Below are positions 3,036 to 48,594 of a stretch of 64,000 bases of DNA, one piece after another. The translations under genes and the position numbers were made by a program. Under the pieces are notes generated by a model. It was not told the origin of the DNA and ran no database searches. It worked only from the letters and a program-made list of their open reading frames with translations. Each line of letters starts with the position of its first letter. The first letter of the stretch is position 1. The DNA is taken from IMG/VR virus record IMGVR_UViG_3300025869_002060, positions 62,001 through 126,000 of that record. One strand, given 5' to 3'.

Positions 3036-3041
3036 TAAATA
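3036..3041 (+). promoter_or_regulatory. T4-like late promoter core TAAATA, 5 nt before the ATG
   Basis: GGTAAATA-GTAGT-ATG; no Shine-Dalgarno. Confidence 0.7.
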
Positions 3042-3046
3042 GTAGT

Positions 3047-5053
3047 ATGACTATTACGCCCACAGTATTAATTGCCGCCAATGGCATACTTAACGACCAA
3101 GCATTTGGAGTAAATTCTGATTTTGGCACAGAAGTATTTGACCTACAAGACTATGTTGTTAGTAACGTTGCTGGAACACAAAACACTAGTATATTAAATG
3201 CACTTCTAGTACTCAAAGAAAATTGGGAAACTGAAGTTATGACTGATGCAACGGATAGAGATGCATTGTGGGCATTAATTGAAAATTATAAATTTTTACG
3301 TGGCAATCGTACTACTAAAACAGAATCACTAACAGCATCAAGTATTCGTGTAACTGATCCTAAATGGGTATGTGACAAGTACAACGACATACATGTATTA
3401 TTTAATGCTAGTGCAAACAAAACATTTAAAGTAAATTATCTAATGCAACAGTTTGAACCTGTTGTTACGTCAAGCGAAAAAACACATATTTCACTTGCTA
3501 AGTTTAAAGATGCTGAATGGGACGACATTAGTTTAGATGTTAAATCACATGATGAAATTGCAAACAACGGTCTTGTAAGATTACTATTAACTGGCAGTGA
3601 TGTTCAAATTGACAATATCAATTTACTTAAACAAAATTTACGTGTAGCTGAACGCCTTGATGATGTAGCCGGTAGAAGACTTGCTGTATTAAGCAAAGCA
3701 CTAAGAGATCTTGGACAGTTATTTGACGCTAAAGATTTGGCCAACATGGGCCTAGCTAAAACATTAATTGAAAATATGTACAGTCTTGGTTTAAGTCAAA
3801 TTGGTGCGTTACATAAAAAAGTATTAGCATTAGAAGTTAATTCGCTTGATGATATAAAAGAAATATACTTGGTAGATATCCTTAGAGAAATTACAGGCAA
3901 AGCACTTGATGAAATAATTGAGCGTACTGGAGTTGTTCTACCAGATCCAGCTAAAGTTAAAACACTAGCAGATCTTTTAAAACAAGAAAATCTGTTTAGT
4001 AAAGAAGTCTTAGATGAATTGCCAAACGGAACACTTACAGGATTGGCGTCAGTACTAGAAAAGATACCAGGTAACTTTGAAACCTTAACACAAGTATCTG
4101 ATATGCTTGACGGAGTTGAGATACCTATATTAACCAATTTAACAGCAGAAGCATCACCGTTGCCTGCAACAGATTATGATGCAATTTTAAGTAAAACACC
4201 AAAAGGATCTGGTGTGGTTAACAATGTAATATTGCCAGACATGTTCTGCCCAATCACTGGAACTAACATATACACTGCTATTAAAATATTCAACAAGTTC
4301 AATGAAGCAGTTGAAAATTTGCTTGGCGCCGCCAGTATATATTCATTGTCAGCAGTTAATCAAGCATCACAAACAACCGACACCTGGCGTAACAACTGGA
4401 TAACAGCATTAAACTCTATTACAACTTCTACTTCTTGTATTTACTGGCTAAATCGTTGCGAAGAAGAATACGCTGAATTTTATAGACAAACTAGTGTTAC
4501 TGATAGTGTTTTTAAAGCCTTTTTTGGAACCAGCGAAAGCCTATTAAGTGAATGGTCTGGTTGGGCAGACTCAAACAACCCAAGCGGTGCAACAACATAT
4601 GACAATCCAGACGGTAATACAGATAGCTCATATGCAAGTTCTAGTAGATTGGTTAACAGTTTACATCAATTTGGAGTTGATACCGGAAACTTGGGCTACA
4701 GAGAAACTTTTGAAAAATTAGCAAAAAATAATCGTTTTGGAGACGCTATACGTTCTGCGTTGTCTGAAGGCAAAATGGCTGTCATTGAAGCACGTAATGG
4801 AAATACTCTAGTAGGAACATTCAATGAAACTGAATTTCGTGCAGGCCTTGCAAAAGAGGCACTAATTGAAGCAACTGAAAAACGTAAAAAAGCACGTATT
4901 GAATTAGATAAAATGATTGATGATATTGCTAAAGGAATAACAGTAGATAGTGACTTGCAAGATATTATTCGTATGCGAGTTGAAAGTACAGTTAATAAAG
5001 AACGTGAACTTGCATCAGTTGCAGGTGTAAAAATTAATCCATTTTTGAAATAA
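3047..5053 (+). CDS. Hypothetical protein, probably virion/baseplate-associated
   Basis: 668-aa ORF after PAAR with a late-type promoter; no recognisable motif. Confidence 0.6.
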   Translation: MTITPTVLIAANGILNDQAFGVNSDFGTEVFDLQDYVVSNVAGTQNTSILNALLVLKENWETEVMTDATDRDALWALIENYKFLRGNRTTKTESLTASSIRVTDPKWVCDKYNDIHVLFNASANKTFKVNYLMQQFEPVVTSSEKTHISLAKFKDAEWDDISLDVKSHDEIANNGLVRLLLTGSDVQIDNINLLKQNLRVAERLDDVAGRRLAVLSKALRDLGQLFDAKDLANMGLAKTLIENMYSLGLSQIGALHKKVLALEVNSLDDIKEIYLVDILREITGKALDEIIERTGVVLPDPAKVKTLADLLKQENLFSKEVLDELPNGTLTGLASVLEKIPGNFETLTQVSDMLDGVEIPILTNLTAEASPLPATDYDAILSKTPKGSGVVNNVILPDMFCPITGTNIYTAIKIFNKFNEAVENLLGAASIYSLSAVNQASQTTDTWRNNWITALNSITTSTSCIYWLNRCEEEYAEFYRQTSVTDSVFKAFFGTSESLLSEWSGWADSNNPSGATTYDNPDGNTDSSYASSSRLVNSLHQFGVDTGNLGYRETFEKLAKNNRFGDAIRSALSEGKMAVIEARNGNTLVGTFNETEFRAGLAKEALIEATEKRKKARIELDKMIDDIAKGITVDSDLQDIIRMRVESTVNKERELASVAGVKINPFLK

Positions 5054-5711
5054 ACTGATATACCTTTTTAAGTAATCTTTTTACAACTGGATGGTCAGTT
5101 TTCCAATCAAACATAGCAAAGTATGCCATTAAGTTGGGACTTAAAAACTTACCCATATCATCTTTAAAACTAGCGGCTTTCCCTGCCATTCGTAGTAATT
5201 GTAGAGCTCCATCTTTGTCTGCTTTACGCACAAGTTCATCTGCAATGTTCATTGCGTATGCTTCAATTTCGTCCGGACGAGTCATGTACTCGTAATTTGA
5301 GTCACGTTGGTCGTATCCATCTCTGCCATCAACAAAGTCTCTGCCACTATATTGTTGAGCATGTAATAGTTCATGTTTAACAGCATCAGATAATTCGTTT
5401 ATAAAATATTCTTTACCTTCGTCAGTCCAGTCTACTGTTTTGTCTTTGCTATTAAAAATTAAAGCAAGTTCAATAAACTCGTCTGCACCATCTTCATGAT
5501 CCTCTGGTTCATAATAAGCACTCAATGCCATTTCGCCACTTGGTACTTCATTTGAGTTGTGTATAACAACACGAAATTGTTCACCTGTTTCGTCAAGTAG
5601 TACTTTTCTGATAATTTTGATAATTTGAGATCGTGATTGTCCAGGCTGTAACAGGCTATACAGTTTGGATAAATTGAACTTCTTTTGGGCAGTAATCTCG
5701 TTGACTTTCAT
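5034..5711 (-). CDS. Putative zinc metallopeptidase (HExxH), possibly virion-packaged
   Basis: KHELLHAQQ plus downstream EIEAYA; start MKVNEI at 5711 lies 5 nt after TAAATA (5717-5722, minus strand). Confidence 0.65.
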   Translation of the reverse strand: MKVNEITAQKKFNLSKLYSLLQPGQSRSQIIKIIRKVLLDETGEQFRVVIHNSNEVPSGEMALSAYYEPEDHEDGADEFIELALIFNSKDKTVDWTDEGKEYFINELSDAVKHELLHAQQYSGRDFVDGRDGYDQRDSNYEYMTRPDEIEAYAMNIADELVRKADKDGALQLLRMAGKAASFKDDMGKFLSPNLMAYFAMFDWKTDHPVVKRLLKKVYQFISKMD

Positions 5712-5766
5712 AGTTGTATTTAGTATAATCAATATAAGACTTTAAACTCAGAGATGTCTGGCACGG

Positions 5767-5807
5767 TAAATACGTACAGTTCCAGCTCAGATTATTGTGC
5801 TGGAATT
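5767..5807 (+). promoter_or_regulatory. Late promoter TAAATA followed by a 5'-terminal hairpin
   Basis: TAAATA 5767-5772; AGTTCCAGC (from 5778) pairs with GCTGGAATT (to 5807). Confidence 0.55.
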
Positions 5808-5871
5808 ATGACTTAATAATGCGGAAGGTGAATAAACTAAAAAATAAATCGTAAACATAGGAGATTCAGAA

Positions 5872-6105
5872 ATGTCTTACTTTGAAAATAAAGCAAGTAA
5901 ACAAAGCGGTCGTGTAGACGATCTGTTAAATGAAGAAGTCCAAGATGAAGATTTTGTTTTTATTGTTGATGGAGTTACTGGAGAATTAAAAAGTGTGTTT
6001 TGCCCACAGTTACCGGATAATACACAAGTAAACAGTACCATCATCCGAACATTAAATGTGTTTGGAATCAACGAGCTCGGCGGTCAACCTAAAACTGTAC
6101 ATTAA
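5872..6105 (+). CDS. Hypothetical protein
   Basis: AGGAG SD upstream; 77 aa. Confidence 0.7.
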   Translation: MSYFENKASKQSGRVDDLLNEEVQDEDFVFIVDGVTGELKSVFCPQLPDNTQVNSTIIRTLNVFGINELGGQPKTVH

Positions 6106-14966: not shown

Positions 14967-15242
14967 ATGGCTAAGAAAAAACAAAGAGCAAGTCAAACTT
15001 CCAAGGGTGAAATTGGAGTTAACAAATCACTTCGTAAAGCATACAGAAGAGAGTATAAAGGAACATTGGCGCAGGCTATTAACCAACATACAGCATGGAA
15101 AAAGTTTAAAAATGTTGTTCTAACTGTTCCAAATCCTAATAAGAACGAAACGGCTAAACCTTTTATTAGAGTAAATGCACGTGATTATTGGGGAAGTCCA
15201 AAACGTACCAGTGGTGTTTTGTCTAAATCAACCACACCATAA
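14967..15242 (+). CDS. Basic hypothetical protein
   Basis: K/R-rich 91 aa, GAGG SD, VVLTVPNPNK.ET.KPFIRV motif. Confidence 0.7.
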   Translation: MAKKKQRASQTSKGEIGVNKSLRKAYRREYKGTLAQAINQHTAWKKFKNVVLTVPNPNKNETAKPFIRVNARDYWGSPKRTSGVLSKSTTP

Positions 15243-15830
15243 TTTTACTGTATCGTTAACAATTTCAGTAGTTTTATAGTCGACCAATGATTCATAATGA
15301 TTTGAATTGATATAACGATATTGTATATCTTTGCGACAAGTCATTGATAGATTAGAGACTACGCCATCATTCTGGAAAGGACTTACCCACGGAGTTCTTC
15401 CTTTTGTTGGAACCAATTGTATCCATGGAATATTAAATTTAACCTGTTGCATTCCAAGTACAGGATACGCAGTTGGGCTAACATCTTGTAGCAGTTGCCA
15501 AAATGGAAATATCCAACGTGTAACTAAAGCACTACCAAGTCCAAGATATGGTGTTGCGATAGTAATTCCAGTTTTAATCTTATTAGAAAATTTTTTGTAT
15601 AGATGGGTGGCATAAATCCCACCCATGCTATGCCCAATGAGTATACAATCACCTTCTAGGTCATTGAGACGATTGCACATAATAGGAAAATTATATGCGA
15701 AACCTTTTTTATGATCGTAACTAAGATAACAAAAGTTAACACCTTTAATATCAAGTTTTTTTAATTCTCTAACTATTAGTGCAAAGCTCTTGTTACTAGC
15801 ATTCGCACCATGAATAAGGATTATGTTCAT
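15228..15830 (-). CDS. Alpha/beta hydrolase (esterase/lipase)
   Basis: LIHGA, GHSMGG nucleophile elbow, TIATPY.G, NDGVV, NH. Confidence 0.88.
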   Translation of the reverse strand: MNIILIHGANASNKSFALIVRELKKLDIKGVNFCYLSYDHKKGFAYNFPIMCNRLNDLEGDCILIGHSMGGIYATHLYKKFSNKIKTGITIATPYLGLGSALVTRWIFPFWQLLQDVSPTAYPVLGMQQVKFNIPWIQLVPTKGRTPWVSPFQNDGVVSNLSMTCRKDIQYRYINSNHYESLVDYKTTEIVNDTVKLWCG

Positions 15831-15837
15831 CCTCTAT

Positions 15838-16311
15838 TTAGTTAGCTTCCTTATACCTATTATTACTTTCGGGCGGTGGGGGTCTTTGATAGTCAATTTT
15901 TTGACCAATTCCATCTCCATATGGAGTCATAGTAGGGCCGCCTGCTGTGATGCAATATACACCCGGTGCAAGGTTCTCAATGAATGTCCAACTGGTAGTT
16001 TTAGGATTCAGCATTAACACACCTGGTGCGGGATTGCCTGGCATTTCGATTGGTCCACTAGCACGAGCCGCTAGAAACTTTCCAAACACAATTTCTTGTG
16101 AAGGTTTAAGTAGTGCTTCGATTTGTGGAGCAGATCCGCATAGAGCTTTAACTTTGATTACAAATGGTTGGTCTTCAGCAACCAGACCTGGTAAAGCTGG
16201 TGCTAAATTTTCTTGGGGGAAGCCAGGTAAAAACTTTCCTGGCTTCTGCTCTGCATAAACAGGCGAAGCAAAGATAAGTGTCATAGCTAATGCCAAAAAC
16301 AACTTCTTCAT
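15838..16311 (-). CDS. Secreted hypothetical protein
   Basis: Sec signal MKKLFLALAMTLIFASPVYA; AGGAGG SD; TAAATA upstream on the minus strand (~16344-16349). Confidence 0.75.
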   Translation of the reverse strand: MKKLFLALAMTLIFASPVYAEQKPGKFLPGFPQENLAPALPGLVAEDQPFVIKVKALCGSAPQIEALLKPSQEIVFGKFLAARASGPIEMPGNPAPGVLMLNPKTTSWTFIENLAPGVYCITAGGPTMTPYGDGIGQKIDYQRPPPPESNNRYKEAN

Positions 16312-16349
16312 TGTTGTAACCTCCTATATAAATGTTACAGTACTATTTA

Positions 16350-20273: not shown

Positions 20274-20334
20274 TGTCTACTGTAATTTTTAGTAAATAAG
20301 TAAATGCAAAGGAACATGTCCGAAGGAATTGCAG

Positions 20335-21087
20335 ATGTCTGAAGATTATAAAAATTATAGTGAGTGTTTATTTAAAAGTGTTCACGACAATCCTAGAGTT
20401 AAAGACTTTAGTAAAAAGAAGTCTGAGATTATTGATGAAGTGCTATCTTATTATAGTCTAAACAAGCATGCCATGAGTGTACTATTTGTAGGATTTAATC
20501 CAGCAATTCTTGTATGTGATTTTCAATCTATTTCTGTGACAGGGGTCACCAGTGAAGTAGTTGAATGGTTACAAAGTCATAATAGTAATATTGAATATGT
20601 TGACTTTGATAGTATTATAGGTAACGGTAATATATCATGGGACGCAATCGTAGCAGTAGATGAGTTCTTTACATATGCATTAGATGATGATTATCAAAAA
20701 GCATCCATTGCAAACATTTGTGGTTTGGCTAACGAAGTTGTTATAAGTACATTGAAGGACTATAAGAACTTGGACTTTAAAGAAAAGGAGTTTAGTCAAC
20801 CAGCAGTATTACGTAATGGTGAAAAATTTAAAATATTTACAGAGTTCCATGATTGGGATTTTAAAGATAGAAGTTGCTGGAAAACTTCAGTTTATGTAAA
20901 TGGATCTAATAATTCACAATACGGACCGTATAACCGAAAGACTATGTATTTTAAACAACTAGCAAAATTCAGCATTGATGCTGGAGCCAGCAGTTTTCTT
21001 GTACACAAGAACTTGATGTTCAAAGGATTAATCAAAAAGAACTACGAACACGTAGTTAGCATAAGATTCAATGATGAGTATAGATGA
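20335..21087 (+). CDS. Degenerate class I SAM-methyltransferase-like protein
   Basis: SVLFVGF at the motif I position and WDAIVAVDEFFTY resembling motif IV; glycine-rich loop eroded. Confidence 0.4.
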   Translation: MSEDYKNYSECLFKSVHDNPRVKDFSKKKSEIIDEVLSYYSLNKHAMSVLFVGFNPAILVCDFQSISVTGVTSEVVEWLQSHNSNIEYVDFDSIIGNGNISWDAIVAVDEFFTYALDDDYQKASIANICGLANEVVISTLKDYKNLDFKEKEFSQPAVLRNGEKFKIFTEFHDWDFKDRSCWKTSVYVNGSNNSQYGPYNRKTMYFKQLAKFSIDAGASSFLVHKNLMFKGLIKKNYEHVVSIRFNDEYR

Positions 21088-28367: not shown

Positions 28368-28399
28368 AAAAACGGCGCTTCACAGGCGCCGTTTTTTTT
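28368..28399 (+). terminator. Intrinsic terminator
   Basis: AAAAACGGCGC-loop-GCGCCG followed by T8. Confidence 0.9.
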
Positions 28400-28429
28400 G
28401 ACTAAAAATAGAACACCTTAAATACTAAT

Positions 28430-29470
28430 ATGAATATATGTTACCAACCTTGGGTAGGACTTGATATTAGTCCACAAGGAGAATACAAACCTTGTTGCAA
28501 ATACTCACATGCAATCAGTGACAACTACAACGATTATCGTAACAGTGATGAACTTAACCAATTAAAACTAGATCATCTCAACGGTAAACGTCCTGACGGT
28601 TGTGCCAGATGTTGGAAAGATGAAGATAACGGGTTACCCAGCAAAAGGCAAATGGATTACGAATATCATTTGAATTCACAGCCTCCTGAACTTGAAAAAA
28701 CGTTGTTGTTAAGTGTAGCATTTGGTAATACATGCAATCTAGCATGTCGCATATGTTCTAGTTATAGCAGTAGTCGCTGGAGCAACGAAGCAAAAAAACT
28801 TGGCGCTTTGTTTCCCAAGTTCATGCATCAGCAATTCTACAAAACAGATGAGTTTAAATCAATGTTGAATGACCTAAGTGGAGACTTGGTTCATATTGAT
28901 ATTCCTGGCGGAGAGCCATTTTTAACTGAAATACCAGAACATATTGAATTCTTAAAACATTTGATTGCTATTGACAATACACCAAGTCTACATTACACAA
29001 CTAACGGAACTCAATGGCCAAAAGGATTAACCAAATTATGGAACCATTTTCCAGAAGTAGATATACAACTAAGTCTTGACGGTACAGGTTCTAAATTTGA
29101 ATACCAACGTTGGCCTGCTAAATGGGATATTGTATACGAGAATATTAAACAATTCCAAGAACTATCAAATAAACATCAGAATATAAGGTTAAGTGTTAGT
29201 CATTCTGTTAGCATATATAATATATTAGACTTAGACAATTTCAAAACATGGTGTGATGCAGAAGGACTACCAACACCATGGATAGGCTTGGTAACAAGAC
29301 CCGAGTACTTAGATATAAAGTGTGCTCCGGAAAATTTTAAAGATAATTTGGATAATATAGACTTTGACAATTTTATAAAATATGTTAATATACTAGACAG
29401 TTCACGAGGACAAAACTTTAAAACTACTTTTCCTGAGCTATGGAATTTAATTAACGATAGGAAGAAATGA
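28430..29470 (+). CDS. Radical SAM protein with N-terminal SPASM/twitch-like Cys cluster
   Basis: CYQPW...KPCC...CARC; CNLACRIC (CxxxCxxC); GGEP; YTTNGT; SLDG; TAAATA-N5-ATG start. Confidence 0.88.
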
Positions 29471-30060
29471 TGCCCAATTTAATACCCACAGTTCTTGAAA
29501 AAACAAGCGAAGGTGAACGTGCCTATGACATTTATAGCCGTTTGCTCAAAGATAGAATTGTATTACTTGATACTGAAGTAAATGAACATAGTGCAAGTTT
29601 GCTTGTTAGTCAATTTTTATTCTTAGAAGCAGATGATCCTGATAGCGATATTATGTTTTATATTAACAGTCCTGGTGGTAGTGTTACTGCTGGTATGGCT
29701 ATATATGATGTTATGCAATTTGTTAAAAGTGATGTTTCAACCATTGTTATGGGACAAGCCTGTTCAATGGGTAGTCTATTAAGCACGGCTGGTGCCGCTG
29801 GAAAACGTTTTATTCTCCCACATGCAAGACACATGATTCATCAACCAAGCGGTGGTGCCAGAGGACAAGCAACAGACATGCAAATACAGGTAGAAGAGAT
29901 TATAGAAATGAAACGTTATCTAACTCAAATCTACGTTGACCACAATAGCAAAGGAAAAACATTTGAAGAGTTTGCTGAAGGTATGGAAAGAGACAATTTT
30001 ATGTCCGCACAACAATCAGTTGATTTTGGACTGGTAGATGAGATTCTAACCAAACGATGA
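29467..30060 (+). CDS. clpP: ATP-dependent Clp protease proteolytic subunit ClpP
   Basis: [34 protein letters not shown] (Ser), MIHQP (His), ERDNFM (Asp). Confidence 0.97.
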
Positions 30061-30653
30061 CCTTAGAAAATAGTCTAAGTAAGAAGTTCAATATCAAACG
30101 TCTTGAAGATTTAAAGTATGATCCTGTTCATCCTGATAGCATACACAATCCTCGACGTTTAGGTGATGACAGAGAAATATTTTTCTTATTAGAAGAAGAT
30201 ACAACAACGTTTGTTTTATGTGTAGCATATACTGATGTATTACCTAACACAATGGATGAAATTTTAGATACTAGTCATGTAGCTAAGAATCCTAAGTTTG
30301 CTATTTTTTACAGTGTTTTTAAAACTCCACACATACAAAATACAGTACACAAAGGTGGTTGGTTAATACTTAGTGCGGCCAGTTATATTAAAGAAAACTA
30401 TCCCACCATTGAACATTTTACTACAATGAGCCCTATACCTAGTCTCTCTAAAAAGTTTGATGCAACTGTTACAGAACAGCAAATAAATGATTATATTATG
30501 ACACGTAAAGATCCTGTCAGTTCATTTCATTTAAAGAACGGTGCTGATTTGATTAGAATTATTCCTGACGCTGATAGTACTGCAATACGTATTAGTCAGA
30601 GCTGGGGATACATGGCCAATTACGATTATACGTCACTCGTCAATACTCTCTAA
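30057..30653 (+). CDS. Minimal malonyl-CoA decarboxylase-like catalytic (GNAT-fold) domain
   Basis: [29 protein letters not shown]...[11 protein letters not shown] match MCD AVFYSI / TLSPIP / DPVAxFHLxNGA / QSxGxMVNYxY. Confidence 0.8.
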
Positions 30654-30695: not shown

Positions 30696-31139
30696 ATGTA
30701 CGAGTATAAATGTAAAATTCTAAAAGTAATTGACGGCGACACCGTTGATATTGATATTGACCTAGGTTTTGACGTAGTATTAACTAACCAACGTGTTAGA
30801 ATGTTTGGAATTGATACTCCAGAATCCAGAACAAGAGATAAAGAAGAAAAGAAATTTGGACTACTAAGTAAAAAGTATGTTCTTGACAGGCTACCTAAAG
30901 GAAGTTACCAAACACTTAAAACTGAAATTGACAGAGATGGCGATGATGCAAGAGGAAAATTTGGTCGTATACTTGGTAGTTTTATGGTATATGATAGTGT
31001 TGATGATCGACAAAGTAGTATCAATGAAATGATGATACGAGATGGGTATGCTGTAGCATATCACGGTCAGAACAAAGATGATATACTTGCAGAGCATATG
31101 TCCAATAGAGACAAGCTAAAGGCCGCTGGCGTTATATGA
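30696..31139 (+). CDS. Thermonuclease (SNase) family protein
   Basis: VIDGDTV, RVRMFGIDTPE, GKFGRILG, INEMMI.DGYA; TAAATA at 30660-30665. Confidence 0.92.
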   Translation: MYEYKCKILKVIDGDTVDIDIDLGFDVVLTNQRVRMFGIDTPESRTRDKEEKKFGLLSKKYVLDRLPKGSYQTLKTEIDRDGDDARGKFGRILGSFMVYDSVDDRQSSINEMMIRDGYAVAYHGQNKDDILAEHMSNRDKLKAAGVI

Positions 31140-34100
31140 AAATCAAAGAACTCAAGATAGACAAACCAGTTGATAGCAACTGGGGCATTCCTCGTTCACA
31201 AATGCCTCAGATACAAACCAACGACTATCCTGCGTTCCTTGACTACCTAGATTCGCATGGTGTTAATTTTGTAAAAGATACTGTTCCAGCACACTCATTA
31301 AAACCTATACAAGGCGAATTTAGTGATAAAGGTGTTGAGAAAGCACTAGCTAAACGTAAACTTGATAAACCTTGTATTGTTAGCAGTGATGGTCATATCA
31401 TTGACGGACACCACAGGTGGTTGGCGGCACTTAACACAAAGCAAAACGTTAGTGTATACAAAGCTGATATACCAGCACACGATTTATTAAAGTTAGTAAA
31501 CGATTTTCCTAAAGTGTATTACAAAAACATATACACTGAAAGTGATGTTAACTATGTTAAACCACAGTTTGATGTAGAATGGGAAGAAGCAAATCGTTAT
31601 AACTACTTTGACAAACTAGGACAAGCAGGTTGGGAAGAACTTGCAAGTAAAGGAAAAGTTGTAAAAGTTAATACAAATAGTGTAAAGAAAATAGGCAATA
31701 CAGGTGCAGACGGAAGCGAATCATTAGATGATTTAGAAACAGATAAAGTTGCAAGATTAAAAAAAGCAATGGCCAGCGGTACAGTTGAAATGCCAATAGT
31801 TGTTAAACAACCAAATGGAAGTTTAGATTTGGTTGCAGGAAACACTAGACTAATAGGACTTATAAGCACACAAGGTGAAGCAAAAGTTTGGTTAGTGGAT
31901 GCAAGTAAGTTAGAAGAAAACTTTGCAGACGGTAAAGTAAAAGGTAAAAGTAGACCAGGACGAGTTAAAAAGTCCGGTGCTAGTTGTAATGGATCAGTAA
32001 CAAGTCTTAGAGCCAAAGCAAAAAAAGCAAGTGGCGAAAAAGCAAAAATGTATCATTGGTGTGCTAACATGAAATCAGGAAAGAAGAAAGCCAAGAAAGA
32101 ATCAGTGGAATCAGACAACATAATATCTGATGAAGTTCGTGTACTTGGAAAACTGTTTACCAAAAACGGATACGAAATAAGAGTGGTAGGTGGTGCAGTT
32201 AGAGATGTAGCACTTGGAAAAGAACCAAAAGACATTGATTTAGCTACAGATGCAACACCAACAGAGATGCAAGCCATGTTTGATAAGGCTAACCTTAAAC
32301 ATATACCTACAGGCATAGAACACGGTACAATTAGTGTTATAATTGACAAAGAACCCTACGAAATTACCACCTTAAGGGCAGATAAAGAGACTGACGGACG
32401 ACATGCTGAAGTAGAGTTTGTTCGTAGTTGGGAACAAGATGCTGAACGTAGAGACTTAACATACAATGCAATGAGCATGGACATGGATGGTAAAATTCAT
32501 GACTACTTTAATGGCATGGATGATCTACAAGATAAAGTAAGTCGTTTTGTTGGTGATCCTACTAAACGTATACAAGAAGATTATCTACGTATATTACGAT
32601 ACTTTCGTTTTCAAGCAAGGCTAGACAAACCAAAGTTTGACAAAGAAGCAATTGATGCTATTAGCAAAGAAGCAAAAGGACTTAAACAAATAAGTGCCGA
32701 ACGTGTATGGATGGAAATATCAAAGTTATTGATTGCACCAAGTGCAATACCAGTGCTAAAGCAAATGGGAGAAACTGGCGTAGCTGATGTTATTGGATTA
32801 GATGTTAGCAATGCTAACAGTGTTAAATTTGATAATCCTATTATGAATCTAGCAATGTTATCAGATGATGTTGGTATTGGTGCTAAGTGGAAAATGTCCA
32901 ACGACAACAAAACTGAATTAGCATTTTATATAGCACACAAAAATAAAAAATTAAGTCAACAAGATGTTGAGGATATGATCAGTGATGGAGCGCCTGCAAC
33001 CTACTTAGCAAATGTTCTAAAGATACAAGGGCAAGATCCAAATTGGGCTAAGGCACAAGTTCCGCAATTTCCTGTAACAGGTAAAGACTTGATTAATTTT
33101 GGAATTAAACCTGGTCCAAACATGGGTAAGATGCTTGATGTATTAAAACAGCAATGGAAGAAATCACGTTTTACAGCCAGCAAAGAAGATTTATTAAACA
33201 CATTAAAGGAATCATTGATTAATCCTGATCCAAAATTACCAAATCTTAAAGAACCAAAAAAATTAAGCAAGTATTCAAAACGTAAAAAAGTGTTCAGTGA
33301 TAATAAAGATAAACCTGAAAACGAGGAACCCGAAAACTCCACCGATAACATTGTTGAAGACCTATCAGCTAATGCAGAATTGTATGTAGACATGGATGGT
33401 GTACTTGCGGACTTCTTTGGCGAGTGGGCAAAACTAATAGGTGTTGATAGCTGGCGTAATATTAAAAACATTGAACCAGCATTAGAGAAGATCAGGCAAC
33501 AAAAAGATTTCTGGATTAACTTGCCAATGACAAGCAATGCTCTACAATTATTAAGTGCCATTAAAGCATACAAAGGCAAGTATAACATATTAAGTGCTCC
33601 GTTACCCGGTGATAAGAACTCTGAACCACAGAAACGTGCATGGATTAAAAAGAATTTAAGTTCTTTCCCGCCAGAAAAAATTATTATTGATCATAACAAG
33701 GCCGCCTATGCAACCCAACCAGATGGAACACCAAATGGATTGATTGATGACTTTGGGCAAAATGTTAGTAAATGGGAAGCCGCAGGTGGAATTGCTATTA
33801 AACATAATGATCTAAAAATAGATAGAACTATAAGCAAATTGGACAAAGAAACAAGTACACCTTCGTATAGTATAAACGAAGATGATGTTGAAGTAAGCAT
33901 GTATGGTGATGCTGAAAAAGGTTATACACTAAGCAAAATTGTAGTACCAAAAGAATTACGTGGGACAGGTATTGGTTCCAAGAAGATGCGAGAGCTTGTT
34001 GATAAAGCAGATAACGAAGGCGCTATTATTGCACTCACACCAGACACAACGTTTGGAGCATCATCTAAAGGACGATTAATTAAATTTTATAAAGGATTTG

Positions 34101-34198
34101 GATTTGTACCGAATGTAGGCCGTAACAAAGATTTCCGTTACAGGGAGACCATGATTCGTTACCCCAAGTCGAGTGGAGGTAAAGATAGCACTCAATGA
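31136..34198 (+). CDS. Multidomain protein: two ParB/Srx-like domains, basic module, CCA-adding tRNA nucleotidyltransferase, HAD 5'(3')-nucleotidase-like domain, GNAT acetyltransferase
   Basis: IIDGHHRW; PIVV...LVAGNTR; VGGAVRD..DIDLAT, RRDLTYNAM, EDYLRILR; YVDMDGVLADF, LIDD; VPKELRGTGIG, FYKGFGF. Confidence 0.88.
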   Translation: MKIKELKIDKPVDSNWGIPRSQMPQIQTNDYPAFLDYLDSHGVNFVKDTVPAHSLKPIQGEFSDKGVEKALAKRKLDKPCIVSSDGHIIDGHHRWLAALNTKQNVSVYKADIPAHDLLKLVNDFPKVYYKNIYTESDVNYVKPQFDVEWEEANRYNYFDKLGQAGWEELASKGKVVKVNTNSVKKIGNTGADGSESLDDLETDKVARLKKAMASGTVEMPIVVKQPNGSLDLVAGNTRLIGLISTQGEAKVWLVDASKLEENFADGKVKGKSRPGRVKKSGASCNGSVTSLRAKAKKASGEKAKMYHWCANMKSGKKKAKKESVESDNIISDEVRVLGKLFTKNGYEIRVVGGAVRDVALGKEPKDIDLATDATPTEMQAMFDKANLKHIPTGIEHGTISVIIDKEPYEITTLRADKETDGRHAEVEFVRSWEQDAERRDLTYNAMSMDMDGKIHDYFNGMDDLQDKVSRFVGDPTKRIQEDYLRILRYFRFQARLDKPKFDKEAIDAISKEAKGLKQISAERVWMEISKLLIAPSAIPVLKQMGETGVADVIGLDVSNANSVKFDNPIMNLAMLSDDVGIGAKWKMSNDNKTELAFYIAHKNKKLSQQDVEDMISDGAPATYLANVLKIQGQDPNWAKAQVPQFPVTGKDLINFGIKPGPNMGKMLDVLKQQWKKSRFTASKEDLLNTLKESLINPDPKLPNLKEPKKLSKYSKRKKVFSDNKDKPENEEPENSTDNIVEDLSANAELYVDMDGVLADFFGEWAKLIGVDSWRNIKNIEPALEKIRQQKDFWINLPMTSNALQLLSAIKAYKGKYNILSAPLPGDKNSEPQKRAWIKKNLSSFPPEKIIIDHNKAAYATQPDGTPNGLIDDFGQNVSKWEAAGGIAIKHNDLKIDRTISKLDKETSTPSYSINEDDVEVSMYGDAEKGYTLSKIVVPKELRGTGIGSKKMRELVDKADNEGAIIALTPDTTFGASSKGRLIKFYKGFGFVPNVGRNKDFRYRETMIRYPKSSGGKDSTQ

Positions 34199-38391: not shown

Positions 38392-38420
38392 AGAAAAGGA
38401 CCTTCGGGTCCTTTTCTTTT
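38392..38420 (+). terminator. Intrinsic terminator with C(UUCG)G tetraloop
   Basis: AGAAAAGGACC-TTCG-GGTCCTTTTCT-TTT. Confidence 0.92.
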
Positions 38421-38452
38421 GAGTGTCGTGTCAATAGGCATTAAATAGCAGT

Positions 38453-39760
38453 ATGTTAGAACTACTGTTAATTGGTATACTAGGACTAGTTGTTGGAATG
38501 GCACTAGGACTGTTTAGTGTTTTTCCTATATATTTTGCAGGCTTTGTTGTGTATGCATTACACACGGCTTGGACACCTGAGTTGTTATTGGTGTTTTGGG
38601 CTACAGCCGCTATTGGAAGTCAGTTCTTTGGAAGTGTTAGTACAATCACACTGGGTATACCTGGAGAAGCAAGTGCCTTAGTATGGATCAAAGACCTCAA
38701 AGGCATGAGTTTACAAGAACGAAACTATTTGCTATACCATACTGCTAAAGGTAGTTTGTTTGCAGGATTAATAGCTCTAGGTGTTGTGTGGTTAGCCTAT
38801 CATTGGGTAAGTGCTTACAGTTACTTTCTATCAAGCGTCAATTTTGTATTAGCAATGTTCCTGTTGGTTATTGCACTATTTGCATTTACCGATCGTAAAC
38901 CTTTAATAGCAATTGGTTTGTTATGTTTGGGTACGTTCTTAGGCCCTGTTAATAACTTTGCATTGCCACCCTGGTGGTATCATGTGCAACTTTGGTTTGA
39001 AAATACCAGCTTCTTTATGCTTATTGCAAGTATGATGTTGATACCAGATCTAATAATGGACAGAGCTAACTTTAAACATATAAAAACAGATCATTTTGAA
39101 CCCAGTGATAACGACGAACGAACATGGTGGACTATATCTAAGAGTACCGTTATTGGTTTATTCAGCGGATTGGTACCAGGACCAGCGGCTGAAACTGCTA
39201 GTGCATTGGCATACCATGCTCACAAAAAGAAAGGTAGATTCCATCAGATTGTTGGTGCCGAAACTGCTAACAATCCCGGAGTGGTAATGATGTTACTTCC
39301 TTTCTTTGCAATGGGTTTACCAATTACTGCTAGTGCTTTGATTATATCAACAGTACTAGATGTTAAGAACGTCGATCCTGTAGAATTTGTAGCAAGTGCA
39401 TCATCAGTCATTCCAAGTTTCAGTGTATTTGATGTTATCATAATGGTAGCTTCAATTGCTACAGTATTTTATTATCTACTCAGCACTCGCTTTATTGATC
39501 TGTACGTAAACATTGTAAAATTCTTATACAGTAAGAGTGCTTACTTGTTGGTCATTATTGTGTTTGCAATGATAATAGCAGATATGAGTGTCAACGAAAC
39601 GCCAGTCTGGCTTTACTCAATCTTACTACTTTTTTTTACCGTCGGCGGTATCTTGCTTAAATACTTCAGTATTAATCCTATCCTGTTTATATTTGGAACA
39701 ATGTTCGGCGATAAACTAATTTGGACACTCATGCAGTTTACATCAATAAACTTTTCATAA
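38453..39760 (+). CDS. Tripartite tricarboxylate transporter permease TctA-like
   Basis: About 12 TM segments, FFGSVSTITLGIPGEAS, GLVPG, GAETANN, LPFFAMGLPITAS. Confidence 0.8.
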   Translation: MLELLLIGILGLVVGMALGLFSVFPIYFAGFVVYALHTAWTPELLLVFWATAAIGSQFFGSVSTITLGIPGEASALVWIKDLKGMSLQERNYLLYHTAKGSLFAGLIALGVVWLAYHWVSAYSYFLSSVNFVLAMFLLVIALFAFTDRKPLIAIGLLCLGTFLGPVNNFALPPWWYHVQLWFENTSFFMLIASMMLIPDLIMDRANFKHIKTDHFEPSDNDERTWWTISKSTVIGLFSGLVPGPAAETASALAYHAHKKKGRFHQIVGAETANNPGVVMMLLPFFAMGLPITASALIISTVLDVKNVDPVEFVASASSVIPSFSVFDVIIMVASIATVFYYLLSTRFIDLYVNIVKFLYSKSAYLLVIIVFAMIIADMSVNETPVWLYSILLLFFTVGGILLKYFSINPILFIFGTMFGDKLIWTLMQFTSINFS

Positions 39761-45578: not shown

Positions 45579-45600
45579 TAGCTAGTTAAATAGCTAATTC

Positions 45601-46217: not shown

Positions 46218-46233
46218 TCATCTACCTTATTGT

Positions 46234-46264
46234 AAAAATGATACGGCTCGAAGGCCGTATCATT
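46234..46264 (-). terminator. Intrinsic terminator (minus strand)
   Basis: AATGATACGGC-CTTCGA-GCCGTATCATT-TTT. Confidence 0.8.
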
Positions 46265-46296
46265 AATTTATTATACTAACGTACCCAAATTATATA

Positions 46297-46743
46297 TTAC
46301 TCTGGAAAGGAGTGTTCTACTTCTTCCCACGCGGTAAATGTAATTCCATTGGCGTTAAAATATTCGTTAATCCATTTTTGATAAACATTGTAATTTAATG
46401 TTCTAGCATCACCAGTGATTGGATCAGTAATGGATTTAGTAGTGTCTGATAGTTCGGCGGTATCGATAGCTCTTTTCTTATCCCAGAACCAGCTCTTAAG
46501 GTTTGATGGAGTTGAATCTGGATAGTCATTAAATTTAAAATAAATTTGCATGTGTAGGTCGTCTGGGCTATCAAATACAGTTTGTTTTATATAAGCGGCC
46601 GGATCAGTACTAGTATATAGTGTTTTAGCTTGGACTGCGGCATGCGACGTAACTACAGCATCTCCTGGGTTTTCGTCAGCAACAATACCCCAACCAATAC
46701 TGTTAGATGGGCGTTTGAGTGTGACTTTAATCATTTTAGGCAT
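46297..46743 (-). CDS. Hypothetical protein, paralogue family member 2
   Basis: MPKMIKVTL..., DYPDSTPSNLKSWFW..KRAID, YNVYQKW, EEVEHSFPE; AGGAG SD; TAAATA at ~46794-46799. Confidence 0.78.
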   Translation of the reverse strand: MPKMIKVTLKRPSNSIGWGIVADENPGDAVVTSHAAVQAKTLYTSTDPAAYIKQTVFDSPDDLHMQIYFKFNDYPDSTPSNLKSWFWDKKRAIDTAELSDTTKSITDPITGDARTLNYNVYQKWINEYFNANGITFTAWEEVEHSFPE

Positions 46744-46824
46744 TTAGTATCTCCTGTTTAGAATCCTGCACGAGGGCTTTTCCTCTTATAATGTATTTAT
46801 AAAACTTTAATGATACAGCCTTAT

Positions 46825-47292
46825 TTACCCCATCCAAGTAGATACTTTTGAACTATCAACAACAGTGATATCAGAAACAGTTAAATTTTTCTCACGTTTA
46901 TATACAGTTGCCCAGTATGCATATTGATTGTAGTCAAAACCATCACATTCACGTATACCGGGTCGTGTTACGGCTTTGCTGGATGCATCTGCCGCTATTT
47001 GTGTTAAAATTTCTCTAGTGTTAGTTAAGTACCAGTCCATTAAATATTCTGGCTCGGGATCTGGTAAATTTTCAAACCAATAGTATTGATAGCAGTAAAG
47101 TGGATCTTCTTCTAATGTATAATACTTTGGATCAATACGTATTGTAGTATCTGTTCCGTCTTTTGGATCTGTTATTGCTGTTAAATTTTTAAACGATTCA
47201 ATAACGTTTTCATCTTCACAATGGAATACAGCCTCTGTGGGCCATTCGTCGTCAGTGAATTGTCTTTGGTGTGTCACCCTAACTAATCTCAT
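46825..47292 (-). CDS. Hypothetical protein, divergent paralogue family member 3
   Basis: MRLVRVTHQR..., FENLPDPEPEYLMDWY, YNQYAYW; GGAG SD. Confidence 0.7.
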   Translation of the reverse strand: MRLVRVTHQRQFTDDEWPTEAVFHCEDENVIESFKNLTAITDPKDGTDTTIRIDPKYYTLEEDPLYCYQYYWFENLPDPEPEYLMDWYLTNTREILTQIAADASSKAVTRPGIRECDGFDYNQYAYWATVYKREKNLTVSDITVVDSSKVSTWMG

Positions 47293-47377
47293 TTATGATT
47301 CTCCAATGATTATTTTATCAGCTTACTTTTACTTAGCGGTAAGTAATACGATGTATAAGTTTTAAATTGGTACATGA

Positions 47378-47776
47378 ATGACAGACATTTTTGACATGAT
47401 AATAACGGGGATTATGATATGGGCCGCAGTCCACATAGTCGGCCGTATACTATATCGGTTTCTTGAGGTTTATAGACATAATCAGAATCGGCGCGAATAC
47501 AATCGAGCATTGACAATGGGTTATGAAATAGAAAATCTTAAAAATGAAATAGATAAAAAGTTTGTTGTTGTAGACATCGAAAGAAATAATGATCAATTGT
47601 ATGCATATAATAACAGTACAAAAACATTCTTATACCAAGGAAAGACGTTGGATGAATTAAAAACTGGAATTGAAGAACGGTTTCCAGGAGTTCATTTAAT
47701 GCTAACAGAAAAATCTGAAAACTTATTTAAATCTGACCTTGCTAAACTCAGATCAAGAAAGGACACGCAGGAATAA
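47378..47776 (+). CDS. Hypothetical protein with N-terminal TM helix
   Basis: TM segment then LYAYN..TKTFLYQGKTLDEL. Confidence 0.7.
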   Translation: MTDIFDMIITGIMIWAAVHIVGRILYRFLEVYRHNQNRREYNRALTMGYEIENLKNEIDKKFVVVDIERNNDQLYAYNNSTKTFLYQGKTLDELKTGIEERFPGVHLMLTEKSENLFKSDLAKLRSRKDTQE

Positions 47777-47782
47777 CCGCAT

Positions 47783-48010
47783 ATGGCAAAAGATGAAAAA
47801 CTGACAGTATCAGGTGAAATCACAGATATTTTACCAAATACTATGTTTAAAGTTAAGTTACTAGAAGAAAATCTGAATCACGAAATAATTGCATACTTAG
47901 GAGGAAAATTACGTCAACATAATATTAAAATCATACAAGGTGATATAGTTGATGTTGAAATGACTCCATACGATTTGTCGAAAGGTCGTATTGTATATCG
48001 AAACAAATGA
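47783..48010 (+). CDS. infA: Translation initiation factor IF-1
   Basis: [57 protein letters not shown]. Confidence 0.96.
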
Positions 48011-48036
48011 TATTAATAGAGTTGATAAATAGTTGC

Positions 48037-48594
48037 ATGTCCGATGATATTATAAAAAAATCTATACAAATAGTTGAACGTAGCGAACGCCCGCAGATGT
48101 CTGTGTTTAAGCCTCGTTATAGTGTTCCTTATGGGCTAAGTCCAATTACAAGTAGTTCAACTCTTGACAACCATTATAATAAACTTTATAAAGGTTATGT
48201 TGACAAATATAACAAAGGTATCAATGTTGGCACTAATAAAGCCGGTGCTTATTTGCACGAAAAATGGTTTGAACAATTTAGACCTCGTAGACAAGTTAAT
48301 AGACCCTCTGGCAAAATACTAGACTTAGTTAACAGACACTACGGAAGTATGAAAGACTTCAAAGATGCTCTTGTTGATGAGTGCCAAAAAGTATATGGAA
48401 GTGGTTGGGTTTATGTTAATCGCAATATGAAAATTAAACAAATACGCAATCATAGAATTCCACCAGATGGAATTATTTTAATAGTAGACATGTGGGAACA
48501 TGCATGGGTAAGAGATTACGGATCTAATAAAAAACAGTATGTACAAAATCTTTGGAAACTGTTTGATTGGACTGTAATTAATGCTAGGACATAA
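48037..48594 (+). CDS. Fe/Mn superoxide dismutase-like protein
   Basis: LSP..S..TLDNHY.KLYKGYV, YLHEKWF, YGSGW, DMWEHAW; start set at the TAAATA-N5-ATG. Confidence 0.82.
   Translation: MSDDIIKKSIQIVERSERPQMSVFKPRYSVPYGLSPITSSSTLDNHYNKLYKGYVDKYNKGINVGTNKAGAYLHEKWFEQFRPRRQVNRPSGKILDLVNRHYGSMKDFKDALVDECQKVYGSGWVYVNRNMKIKQIRNHRIPPDGIILIVDMWEHAWVRDYGSNKKQYVQNLWKLFDWTVINART

What the first reader, a model, noticed from the sequence alone, without database searches (positions are those of the whole stretch)
3036..48039. A class of probable leaderless late mRNAs: TAAATA-N5-ATG five times
Seen: five genes begin exactly 5 nt after a TAAATA and have no Shine-Dalgarno. They are 3047 (TAAATA GTAGT ATG), 5711 minus (CAACT), 28430 (CTAAT), 38453 (GCAGT) and 48037 (GTTGC). 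Other TAAATA genes (16311, 35424, 42397, 46743, 53157, 62242) have longer leaders with a clear SD. At 5767 a hairpin starts exactly at the 6th base after TAAATA, consistent with +1 there. Established: T4 gp55 late promoters are TATAAATA with initiation a few nt downstream. Inference: the A of ATG is +1, so late transcripts split into leadered and leaderless classes, possibly tuned by the phage IF-1 and bL33-like proteins.
Basis: partly seen in the sequence, partly recalled or inferred. Interest (0 to 1): 0.75.

Follow-up and report, generated by a model that had tools for sequence, protein, structure and literature searches.

The report
Promoter-abutted, probably leaderless phage genes
In this marine giant phage and its uncultured relatives, about a dozen genes start exactly 5 bases after a T4-like late-promoter box and have no ribosome-binding site, so their mRNAs most likely begin at the AUG itself; this layout is known from Thermus phages but not from T4-related ones.

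Summary
In the 228-kb record, TAAATA-Nk-ATG opening an ORF of at least 100 aa occurs 9 times at k=5, against a mean of 0.55 for other k (P~8e-9). With TAAGTA included there are 12 sites. None has a Shine-Dalgarno. The base before the ATG is a pyrimidine in 11/11 sites, against 37% at SD-led starts. Three sites lie directly after strong terminators. Orthologues at 38-63% protein identity keep motif-N5-ATG while the flanks diverge. Four uncultured relatives show the same near-start cluster at N4-N7. T4, Serratia BF, Vibrio 2.275.O, Phosso and Atu_ph07 do not.

The leaderless reading is therefore well supported indirectly. It is not proven, because the metatranscriptome contigs gave no 5'-end information.

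- A gp55-like sigma is absent from this 65%-complete record. It is present in a 97%-complete relative, in the region this record lacks. gp33 and gp45 were not found.
- Sigma-70-type early promoters also abut ATGs, so the class is not purely late.
- IF-1 does not co-occur with the trait, and the bL33 match is below threshold.

The closest precedent is Thermus phage phiYS40. I rate this a new variant of a known kind.

The parts
3036..3049 (+). TAAATA (3036-3041), a 5-nt spacer GTAGT and the ATG (3047) of a 668-aa protein of unknown function (CDS 3047-5053). There is no SD, and the next in-frame start is 192 nt downstream.
   Evidence: Orthologue L120 (38% aa) has ATAAATA-GTAAT-ATG with N-terminus MSITPTVLIA against MTITPTVLIA here, and the early codon differences are synonymous.
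5709..5722 (-). TAAATA (5722..5717), spacer CAACT and the ATG (5711) of a 225-aa HExxH-motif protein (CDS 5034-5711, minus strand). It is the divergent partner of the promoter at 5767.
   Evidence: Orthologue in L120 (59% aa) has TATACTAAATA-GTAGC-ATG, and homology starts at MLVNEIT against MKVNEIT here. A natural G>A variant at 5716 in run X9 keeps the spacing.
5767..5807 (+). Leadered comparator: TAAATA 5767-5772, then a 9-bp stem-loop at 5778-5807 that begins on the 6th base after the box. An SD (TAGGAGA) and the ATG at 5872 follow.
   Evidence: A divergent leadered TAAATA promoter is also present at the orthologous place in L120.
28368..28432 (+). Terminator hairpin (28368-28396 plus a T-run), TTGACT (28398-28403), a 15-nt spacer, TAAATA (28419-28424), CTAAT and the ATG at 28430 of a radical-SAM protein (CDS 28430-29470). 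ClpP (29467-30060) and an MCD-like gene (30057-30653) follow and overlap it.
   Evidence: Hairpin dG -17.6, z -5.2. G002 orthologue (58% aa): terminator, TTGACC-N15-TAAATA-TACAT-ATG. Distant homologues begin at the same Met-x-(N)-I-C-x-x-P-W.
38392..38455 (+). Terminator hairpin (38392-38417, UUCG loop, T-run), TTGAGT, a 17-nt spacer, TAAATA (38442-38447), GCAGT and the ATG at 38453 of a TctA-family membrane protein (CDS 38453-39760).
   Evidence: the Pfam TctA profile begins at residue 5; dG -16.4, z -3.9. G002 orthologue (81% aa): a compensated terminator, TTGACC-N15-TAAATA-CCATTG-ATG, so the spacing there is 6.
47783..48039 (+). Phage IF-1 gene (47783-48010), then GATAAATA (TAAATA 48026-48031), GTTGC and the ATG at 48037 of an Fe/Mn superoxide dismutase (CDS 48037-48594). 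An alternative in-frame ATG at 48007 overlaps the IF-1 stop.
   Evidence: In G002 the homology (78% aa) begins at this Met, and there the layout is IF-1 stop, TCA, TAAATA-CGGT-ATG, so the spacing is 4.
20293..20342 (+). TAAATA-AGTAA-ATG opening only a 12-codon ORF. The real gene starts at 20329/20335 behind an AAGGA SD. If +1 is this A, it would be a leaderless mini-ORF inside a leader.
15827..15840 (-). Possible sixth case in the window, with spacing 4: TAAATA (15840..15835), GAGG and the ATG at 15830 of a 200-aa ORF (15228-15830, minus strand). No usable SD.
   Evidence: Not followed up in relatives.
16311..16349 (-). Leadered TAAATA gene used as a comparator (d=32, SD AGGAGGT). The others are at 35453->35424 (-), 42451->42397 (-), 46799->46743 (-), 53131->53157 (+) and 62208->62242 (+).

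Best explanation
These genes are transcribed from short promoters that consist essentially of a -10-type box. The consensus is (A)TAAATA and TAAGTA is tolerated. The box sits so that RNA polymerase starts on the A of the ATG, or within 1-2 nt of it.

The resulting mRNAs have no 5' leader and no Shine-Dalgarno. They must be translated by the leaderless pathway, in which the ribosome recognises a 5'-terminal AUG.

The same box, placed at least 19 nt from the start codon, drives ordinary SD-led genes, including the tail-fibre genes. Distances of about 8-18 nt are avoided: such a leader would be too long for leaderless initiation and too short to hold an SD.

The box is most likely read by host RNA polymerase carrying the clade's gp55-like late sigma. 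The same layout also occurs at sigma-70-type early promoters of this phage, so leaderless initiation is a general expression mode of this lineage, not a purely late one.

Shown: the geometry, the statistics, the conservation and the reality of the N-termini. Inferred: the position of +1, which sigma reads the box, and the timing.
For: - **Spacing spike.** 9 sites at N5 against 0.55 expected (P 8e-9), and 12 with TAAGTA. TAAATA at d=5 is the only non-SD hexamer/distance pair among the top pairs upstream of starts.
- **No SD and no alternative start.** There is no SD-led in-frame start for 180-220 nt at 3047, 5711 and 28430. 12 of 13 sites stay clean under an automatic filter.
- **Real N-termini.** Pfam profiles begin at residues 2-5, and orthologue homology begins at the Met.
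- **Start-site signature.** Pyrimidine at -1 in 11/11 sites against 37% at SD-led starts (P 1.7e-5). All start codons are ATG.
- **Terminators.** Strong terminators end 6-25 nt before the box at w28430, w38453 and genome 54254, which leaves no room for a leader.
- **Divergent pairs.** Genome 8234(-)/8273(+) lie 38 nt apart, each with a box-N5-ATG.
- **Conservation.** Motif-N5-ATG is kept at 38-63% aa identity for w3047, w5711, w28430, genome 54254 (in two relatives) and genome 130867.
- **Independent genomes of the lineage.** G005 (338 kb) has 25 clean sites at N4-N7, G003 has 8 and G002 has 3. Five cultured controls, T4 included, have 1-4 each.
- **Late use in a relative.** In G005 the class includes a tail-tube-domain protein and a virion structural protein.
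- **Leadered class.** 74% purine at the 6th base after the box, and A at -1 of the box in 24/39.
- **T4 numbering.** It places +1 at that base (PMC2988020).
- **Clade background.** ATAAATA is already the predicted late box in this clade (PMC5259590).
Against: - No 5' ends were mapped. RNA contigs from four metatranscriptomes bridge 3047, and in one run they bridge the divergent 5712-5871 spacer. Depth is flat at 3-10x, the contigs are unstranded and the tool warns of DNA carry-over.
- No gp55-like gene is in this record.
- Only 2 of the 8 N5 sites have the A before TAAATA that 62% of leadered sites have.
- 3 of 8 have a TTGAnn box 15-17 nt upstream, so some may belong to another promoter class.
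- In relatives the spacing drifts to 4, 6 or 7. That needs flexible start-site choice or 1-3-nt leaders.
- The host is unknown, and leaderless AUGs work poorly in E. coli (about 10% of leadered initiation, PMC4633059).
Confidence: 0.7

Rival explanations
1. The layout is leaderless as above, but at these sites the box is not a gp55-type late promoter. It acts as the -10 element of an early or middle promoter, read by host sigma-70 or by another phage sigma together with a TTGAC-like box 15-17 nt upstream. The genes involved (radical SAM, TctA, SOD and others) would then be early or middle genes, not late ones.
For: - TTGACT-N15-TAAATA at w28398. TTGAGT-N17 at w38419. TTGATT-N16 at genome 10725.
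- TTGACC-N15-TAAATA occurs twice in G002. The same architecture appears at genome 22119 and 138866.
- 3/8 leaderless sites carry such a box, against 2/39 leadered sites.
- The encoded functions look metabolic, not structural.
- Bona fide TTGACA-N17-TATAAT promoters also abut ATGs.
- Rak2-like phages encode an extra sigma-70-like factor (PMC5259590).
Against: - A 15-nt spacer is short for sigma-70.
- The alternative sigma-70 reading at 28398 (TTGACT-17-AATACT) would start transcription inside or beyond the ATG.
- Five of the eight sites have no -35-like box.
- At genome 54254 only 6 nt separate the terminator T-run from the box.
- In G005 virion proteins use the same layout.
Confidence: 0.25
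2. The genes are translated from longer transcripts that start upstream or read through. The A/U-rich TAAATA then acts at the RNA level as an unstructured, S1-binding, SD-independent initiation region.
For: RNA contigs bridge 3047 in three runs and bridge 5712-5871 in one run. 3047 and 48037 follow co-directional genes with no terminator between.
Against: - An RNA enhancer would not need single-nucleotide spacing.
- It would not be identical to the box that sits 19-50 nt upstream of SD-led genes.
- It would not need a pyrimidine at -1.
- Three sites follow strong terminators, and two pairs are divergent with no upstream transcript available.
- The bridging contigs are unstranded and may be DNA.
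Confidence: 0.08
3. The pattern is chance plus mis-called starts, and the real start codons lie elsewhere.
For: - In Vibrio phage 2.275.O and Serratia phage BF, several TAAATA-N4/N7-ATG cases (3 of the 5 listed) are visibly followed by an SD and a second ATG.
- One of the nine N5 hits here (genome 32477) is internal to a gene, and two more open only mini-ORFs.
Against: P 8e-9 for the spike. There are no downstream SD-led starts. N-terminal homology and the motif are conserved across orthologues.
Confidence: 0.03

Closest known systems
Thermus phages phiYS40 and Lalka27a: leaderless middle/late mRNAs
   Same: Late promoters are essentially a -10 box with the start site 6 bp downstream. The A or G of the start codon is the 5' end of most transcripts (bioRxiv 10.64898/2026.04.20.719267). 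In phiYS40 the infection shifts the IF2/IF3 balance in favour of leaderless mRNAs (PMC3594737). The logic is the same as proposed here, including the idea of tuning initiation factors.
   Different: The phage lineage, the host phylum (Thermus is itself rich in leaderless mRNAs) and the box (TAGGGT) are all unrelated. There, most transcripts are leaderless. Here it is a minority class next to a strong SD-led majority (214 of 299 crude gene calls have an SD within 120 nt of the ORF start). No 5' ends have been mapped here.
Phage T4 late promoters (TATAAATA; gp55, gp33, gp45)
   Same: The core box and its implied position (-13 to -6, +1 on the 6th base after it) are the same. Most sites have no -35 element. 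The box precedes the tail-fibre genes (PMC2988020).
   Different: T4 shows no cluster at N4-N7, and its leadered peak is at d~28. Only ATAAATA or TAAATA is conserved here. gp33 and gp45 were not detected in this clade. gp55-like is found only in relatives.
Rak2-like and Atu_ph07-like giant T4-related phages (CBB, GAP32, Serratia BF, Vibrio 2.275.O, Phosso)
   Same: The nearest DNA polymerases are 42-50% identical. The expected genome size is about 350 kb. These phages have a predicted ATAAATA late box and a gp55-like sigma without gp33 or gp45 (PMC5259590).
   Different: The cultured members examined have only the leadered hump. The promoter-abutted class is confined to the uncultured marine lineage: G000, G002, G003, G005 and small contigs.
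Classical single leaderless phage mRNAs (lambda cI from PRM) and leaderless genes of mycobacteria
   Same: The -10 element lies a few bases upstream of a 5'-terminal AUG, with no SD. A 5'-terminal ATG or GTG is necessary and sufficient in mycobacteria (PMC4633059). The lambda example rests on my own knowledge.
   Different: Here one dedicated phage promoter box at fixed spacing serves a whole set of genes, and it is conserved across a phage lineage.

Membership tests
Leaderless mRNA | The primary transcript's 5' end lies on the first base of the start codon (a 5' UTR of 0 to a few nt). | tested here: inconclusive
   the Logan RNA contigs are low-depth and unstranded, and they bridge the sites. 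The tool warns of DNA in the library. Raw reads were not available.
Leaderless mRNA | AUG (rarely GUG) start codon. | tested here: met
   candidate starts at d=5 of TAAATA are ATG 8, GTG 0, TTG 0, and the three TAAGTA d=5 sites are ATG. The 12-site count comes from an ATG-containing pattern.
Leaderless mRNA | No Shine-Dalgarno upstream of the start codon. | tested here: met
   no SD core of 4 nt or more. Only 11 nt lie between the start of the box and the ATG.
Leaderless mRNA | A promoter -10 element 5-7 nt upstream of the start codon. | tested here: met
   for TAAATA and TAAGTA at N5. for TATAAT and TATAGT at N5-N7.
T4-type late transcription (gp55 system) | A TATAAATA-like box without a -35 element. 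| tested here: met
   ATAAATA is the top upstream 7-mer (30 of 49 copies lie upstream of genes, 14-fold enrichment). Profile. The form is relaxed: the first T and A are not conserved. 3 of the 8 N5 sites carry a TTGAnn box at 15-17 nt.
T4-type late transcription (gp55 system) | A phage-encoded gp55 late sigma. | tested here: inconclusive
   Not found in this record, which is 65% complete. Found in G005 (E 3.7e-24), within a 116-kb block that has no counterpart in this record. Also found in four cultured relatives.
T4-type late transcription (gp55 system) | The gp33 co-activator and the gp45 sliding-clamp activator. | tested here: not met
   phrog_223 (gp45) has no match in this record. phrog_254 (gp33) has no match in G000, G005, W01 or W02, and a marginal one (E 0.026) in W04. 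This agrees with PMC5259590.
T4-type late transcription (gp55 system) | Initiation on about the 6th base after the box, with late, replication-coupled timing. | not testable with these tools
   Indirect support only: purine in 29/39 leadered sites at that base, the hairpin at 5778, and the minimum leadered distance of 19.
Sigma-70-type early promoter | TTGACA, 16-18 nt, TATAAT. | tested here: not met
   Not met for the five window sites. The only match, TTGACT-17-AATACT at 28398, would start inside or after the ATG. It is met for genome 30690, 42810 and 57730, which lie outside the window.

The most novel reading that the evidence does not exclude
A marine lineage of giant T4-related phages has evolved a compact 'box-N5-AUG' expression module. 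It fuses the promoter to the start codon and is used for both early and late genes. This gives the phage a second translation regime, independent of the anti-SD sequence. That regime could keep selected genes expressed when SD-dependent initiation is shut down, saturated or attacked (by the phage itself or by a host defence). Orthologous genes switch between the leadered and leaderless forms over evolutionary time. One example is the Lon-like protease, which is leadered here and N5 in G005.
Probability: 0.2. Interest if true: 0.8.

Novelty: new variant of a known kind. Interest (0 to 1): 0.55.

Why it matters
If 5'-end mapping confirms it, this would be the first T4-related (gp55-type) phage lineage in which the late promoter box doubles as the positioning signal for leaderless translation.

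It would also give gene callers a simple sequence rule: box, 4-7 nt, ATG, no SD. SD-trained gene callers risk mis-placing such starts; at 5711 and 48037 the longest ORF runs to an upstream TTG or ATG.

The contrast between the uncultured marine lineage and its cultured relatives offers a natural experiment on when phages adopt leaderless expression. It may also hint at a host whose ribosomes translate leaderless mRNAs efficiently. The empty 8-18-nt zone is a clean in-genome illustration of the two mutually exclusive initiation modes.

Tried and rejected
- **RNA evidence.** One read-laying run with four metatranscriptome runs on w2000-7999 gave fragmentary, unstranded contigs at 3-10x. Contigs cross 3047 and, in one run, the divergent spacer. 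They cannot be used for 5' ends. Synteny with G005 explains the gp55 gap.\n- **A clade-wide trait.** Rejected: four cultured relatives and T4 lack the cluster.\n- **An IF-1 link.** Rejected on co-occurrence. The bL33-like match is sub-threshold.\n- **A sigma-70 reading of 28398-28426.** Rejected, because it would cut off the start codon.\n- **5'-terminal hairpins as a general mark of +1.** Other leadered sites have stems that start at various offsets (inspection), so the hairpin at 5778 is only anecdotal.\n- **No orthologues.** None were found for genome 10758 or, beyond identical copies, for genome 149835.\n- **Terminator scan.** It missed the clear hairpin at 38392-38417, so I folded that stretch directly instead.

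Full report
**What the window is.** The window is bases 62001-126000 of a 228,348-bp single-contig IMG/VR virus record. CheckV rates the record 65% complete, which implies a genome of about 350 kb. GC content is about 37%. The DNA polymerase is T4-type family B (phrog_262, E 2e-185). Its nearest relatives are Sinorhizobium phage Phosso (50%), Agrobacterium phage Atu_ph07 (46%), and Vibrio phage 2.275.O and Serratia phage BF (42%). These belong to the giant Rak2-like/Atu_ph07-like branch of T4-related phages. The sequence occurs in many marine metagenomes and in four metatranscriptomes of one study.

**The observation.**
- All five sites exist as written.
- TAAATA is depleted in the window: 65 observed against 100 expected. 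TAAATA-N5-ATG is enriched: 6 against 1.96, and 1 of 100 shuffles reaches 6.
- With 299 crude gene calls for the whole record, the distance from TAAATA to candidate starts shows 8 ATGs at exactly 5. Distances 0-4 and 6-18 are almost empty, and a broad hump begins at 19.
- Without any gene model, TAAATA-Nk-ATG opening an ORF of at least 100 aa gives 9 at k=5 against a mean of 0.55 for the other k (Poisson 8e-9). TAA[AG]TA gives 12.
- Among all hexamer/distance pairs upstream of starts, TAAATA at 5 ranks with the Shine-Dalgarno hexamers and is the only non-SD entry.
- The sites, in genome coordinates (window coordinate = genome coordinate minus 62000): TAAATA at 8234(-), 10758, 65047, 67711(-), 90430, 100453, 110037 and 149835, plus one internal hit at 32477; TAAGTA at 8273, 54254 and 130867(-).

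**Are these the real start codons?**
- At 3047, 5711 and 28430 the next in-frame start lies 180-220 nt downstream and has no SD.
- Pfam profiles begin at residue 5 for TctA, residue 5 for DUF3307 at genome 8234, and residue 2 for the Fe-S protein at genome 57730.
- Orthologue homology begins at the proposed Met for the SOD gene (48037, not 48007), for the 5711 gene (not the TTG at 5732) and for genome 130867 (not 130900).
- Between the 668-aa protein and its 38%-identical orthologue, the first ten codons differ almost only at synonymous positions.

**Signs that transcription starts at the ATG.**
1. In T4, TATAAATA occupies -13 to -6 (PMC2988020). The sixth base after TAAATA is therefore +1, which is the A of these ATGs.
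2. The base before the ATG is a pyrimidine at 11 of 11 sites, against 37% at SD-led starts (P 1.7e-5). This is the usual -1/+1 preference of bacterial RNA polymerase (established knowledge).
3. In the 39 leadered TAAATA sites, the equivalent base is a purine in 29 and a C in only 1.
4. Strong terminator hairpins with T-runs end 6-25 nt before the box at w28430, w38453 and genome 54254 (dG -17.6, -16.4 and -16.6; z -5.2, -3.9 and -4.7). The promoter must therefore lie in that short gap, and there is no room for a leader.
5. Genome 8234(-) and 8273(+) are divergent genes only 38 nt apart, each with box-N5-ATG. 5711(-) and 5767(+) form a similar divergent pair.
6. The hairpin at 5778-5807 starts on the sixth base after the 5767 box.
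7. The shortest leadered distance is 19, which gives a 14-nt leader that just holds an SD. The empty 8-18 zone is what two mutually exclusive initiation modes predict.

**Conservation.** Two syntenic uncultured relatives were fetched: G002 (36 kb) and G003 (112 kb). A 338,510-bp, 97%-complete relative, G005, was also fetched. In G005, 145 of 299 proteins match at a mean identity of 48%. Two small contigs, L120 and L127, added further orthologues.

| Gene here | Relative | Layout in the relative |
|---|---|---|
| w3047 | L120 | ATAAATA-GTAAT-ATG |
| w5711 | L120 | CTAAATA-GTAGC-ATG; the divergent leadered promoter is also kept |
| w28430 | G002 | terminator, TTGACC-N15-TAAATA-TACAT-ATG |
| w38453 | G002 | spacing 6 |
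| w48037 | G002 | spacing 4 |
| genome 54254 (TAAGTA) | G003 | TAAGTA-TTAGC-ATG, after a terminator with a different stem |
| genome 54254 (TAAGTA) | G005 | TAAATA-CCTAC-ATG, after a terminator with a different stem |
| genome 130867 (TAAGTA) | L127 | TAAATA-ACAGT-ATG |

The flanks and the spacer letters differ, while the box and the spacing persist.

**Other genomes.** Counts are of TAA[AG]TA-N4..7-ATG opening an ORF of at least 100 aa with no SD-led alternative start.

| Genome | Size | Clean sites |
|---|---|---|
| G000 (this record) | 228 kb | 12 |
| G005 | 338 kb | 25 |
| G003 | 112 kb | 8 |
| G002 | 36 kb | 3 |
| Phosso | 469 kb | 1 |
| Atu_ph07 (part) | 320 kb | 2 |
| Vibrio 2.275.O | 349 kb | 3 |
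| Serratia BF | 357 kb | 4 |
| T4 | 169 kb | 2 |

Several of the few cases in the cultured phages are visibly followed by an SD and a second ATG. T4's own distribution peaks at d~28. The class is therefore a property of this uncultured marine lineage, not of the clade.

**Which polymerase reads the box, and when?**
- ATAAATA is the most enriched 7-mer upstream of genes: 30 of 49 copies, 14-fold. It precedes the tail-fibre genes at 215-223 kb. It matches the late box predicted for phage CBB and GAP32 (PMC5259590).
- No gp55, gp45 or gp33 homologue is in this record.
- A gp55-like ORF of about 300 aa is present in G005 (E 3.7e-24), Vibrio 2.275.O, Serratia BF, Atu_ph07 and Phosso.
- Synteny places the G005 copy (207 kb) inside a 116-kb block (110-226 kb) that has no counterpart here. 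That block corresponds to the missing third of this genome.
- In G005 the class includes a tail-tube-domain protein and a virion structural protein. Late use is therefore plausible.
- Three points argue against a purely late class:
  - 3 of the 8 N5 sites carry a TTGAnn box 15-17 nt upstream. TTGAC-N15-TAAATA recurs after terminators here and in G002.
  - The window genes are metabolic: radical SAM with ClpP, TctA and SOD.
  - The phage's abundant early promoters, GGTTGAC(A/C/T)-N17-TATA(C/A)T, abut ATGs without an SD at genome 30690 (N6), 42810 (a primase-like protein, N7) and 57730 (an Fe-S protein, N5). The first two are kept in G005 with the same spacing.

**Initiation-factor idea.** The 75-aa ORF at 47783-48010 is a real IF-1 (PF01176, E 4.8e-21). 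Homologues occur in G002 and in Phosso, which lacks the class. None occurs in G005, which has the largest class. The bL33-like match (w14865-14936) scores 19.9 bits, below the 25-bit cut-off. The idea itself has a precedent: phiYS40 makes mostly leaderless middle/late mRNAs and shifts IF2/IF3 levels (PMC3594737). In Thermus phage Lalka27a, late promoters start 6 bp after the -10 box, on the start codon (bioRxiv 10.64898/2026.04.20.719267). By contrast, no leaderless transcripts were found in phiKZ (PMC8244752), and AR9 has UTRs of 26-491 nt (PMC5312081).

**RNA data.** Four RNA runs hold the region. When laid on w2000-7999 they gave only short, unstranded Logan contigs at 3-10x. Contigs cross 3047 in three runs, and in X9 one crosses the divergent 5712-5871 spacer. 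X25 breaks at 3035|3061. X25 and X26 have no coverage around 5600-6000. The tool warns that DNA may be present. This neither supports nor refutes a start at the ATG.

**Verdict.** The leaderless mechanism is the best explanation (about 0.7), but it rests on indirect evidence. The late/gp55 label is plausible yet incomplete. The IF-1/bL33 link is unsupported. This is a new variant of a known kind of system.

Noticed in passing
window 25590(-), 25635, 25896, 26257, 27691, 36988, 37526, 42494, 42579, 45206, 60302 (first base of TTGAC); many more across the genome: A highly stereotyped early-promoter cassette, repeated about 20 times: aaaaaGGTTGAC(A/C/T)ttttgg...(c)gTATA(C/A)T, then about 12 nt, then ATAAGGAA(t)TAGGAG, then ATG. 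Promoter, leader and SD are copied almost as one unit.
   Followed up: partly
window 28398-28424; genome 22119 and 138866; G002 upstream of the rSAM and TctA genes: A recurring TTGAC(T/C)-N15-TAAATA architecture directly after terminator T-runs. It may be a distinct (middle?) promoter class. The copy at genome 22119 faces a 214-nt gap with no called gene.
   Followed up: partly
window 47346-47380: TAAGTA-ATACG-ATG opens a 4-codon mini-ORF (ATG TAT AAG TTT TAA). It ends 12 nt before the SD-less ATG of the 132-aa gene at 47378. This could be a leaderless upstream mini-ORF with re-initiation.
   Followed up: no
window 47783-48594: A phage-encoded IF-1 lies immediately upstream of an Fe/Mn superoxide dismutase. 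The pair is kept in relative G002, and IF-1 also occurs in Sinorhizobium phage Phosso.
   Followed up: partly
window 31136-34198: A 1020-aa fusion protein combines a CCA-adding/poly(A) polymerase-type nucleotidyltransferase, an NT5C-like 5'-nucleotidase and a GNAT acetyltransferase domain.
   Followed up: no
genome 203-211 kb (minus strand), outside the window: At least six paralogues of the window's radical-SAM protein (28430) lie in a row next to the tail-fibre genes (g204320m to g211181m, 21-31% identity to the G002/G003 orthologue).
   Followed up: no
genome 139848 (window 77848 equivalent, outside the window) versus G005 315876: The Lon-like ATP-dependent protease is leadered here (TAAATA, then 27 nt) but has TAAATA-TTTTT-ATG in G005. 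Orthologues evidently switch between the two layouts.
   Followed up: partly
G005 124854(-) and 117200(-): Two genes with TAAATA-N7-ATG begin directly after tRNA-like 3' ends (GGTTCGATTCC...CCA-type sequence).
   Followed up: no
window 5716 and 6116: Natural variants in RNA run X9. G>A at 5716 lies inside the 5-nt spacer of the 5711 site and leaves the spacing unchanged. A 1-nt deletion falls in the A-run between the SD and the ATG of the gene at 6126.
   Followed up: no
window 54148-59493: A 1781-aa protein has an S8-peptidase-like region. It shares a roughly 300-aa segment (37-46% identity) with hundreds of cyanophage records.
   Followed up: no
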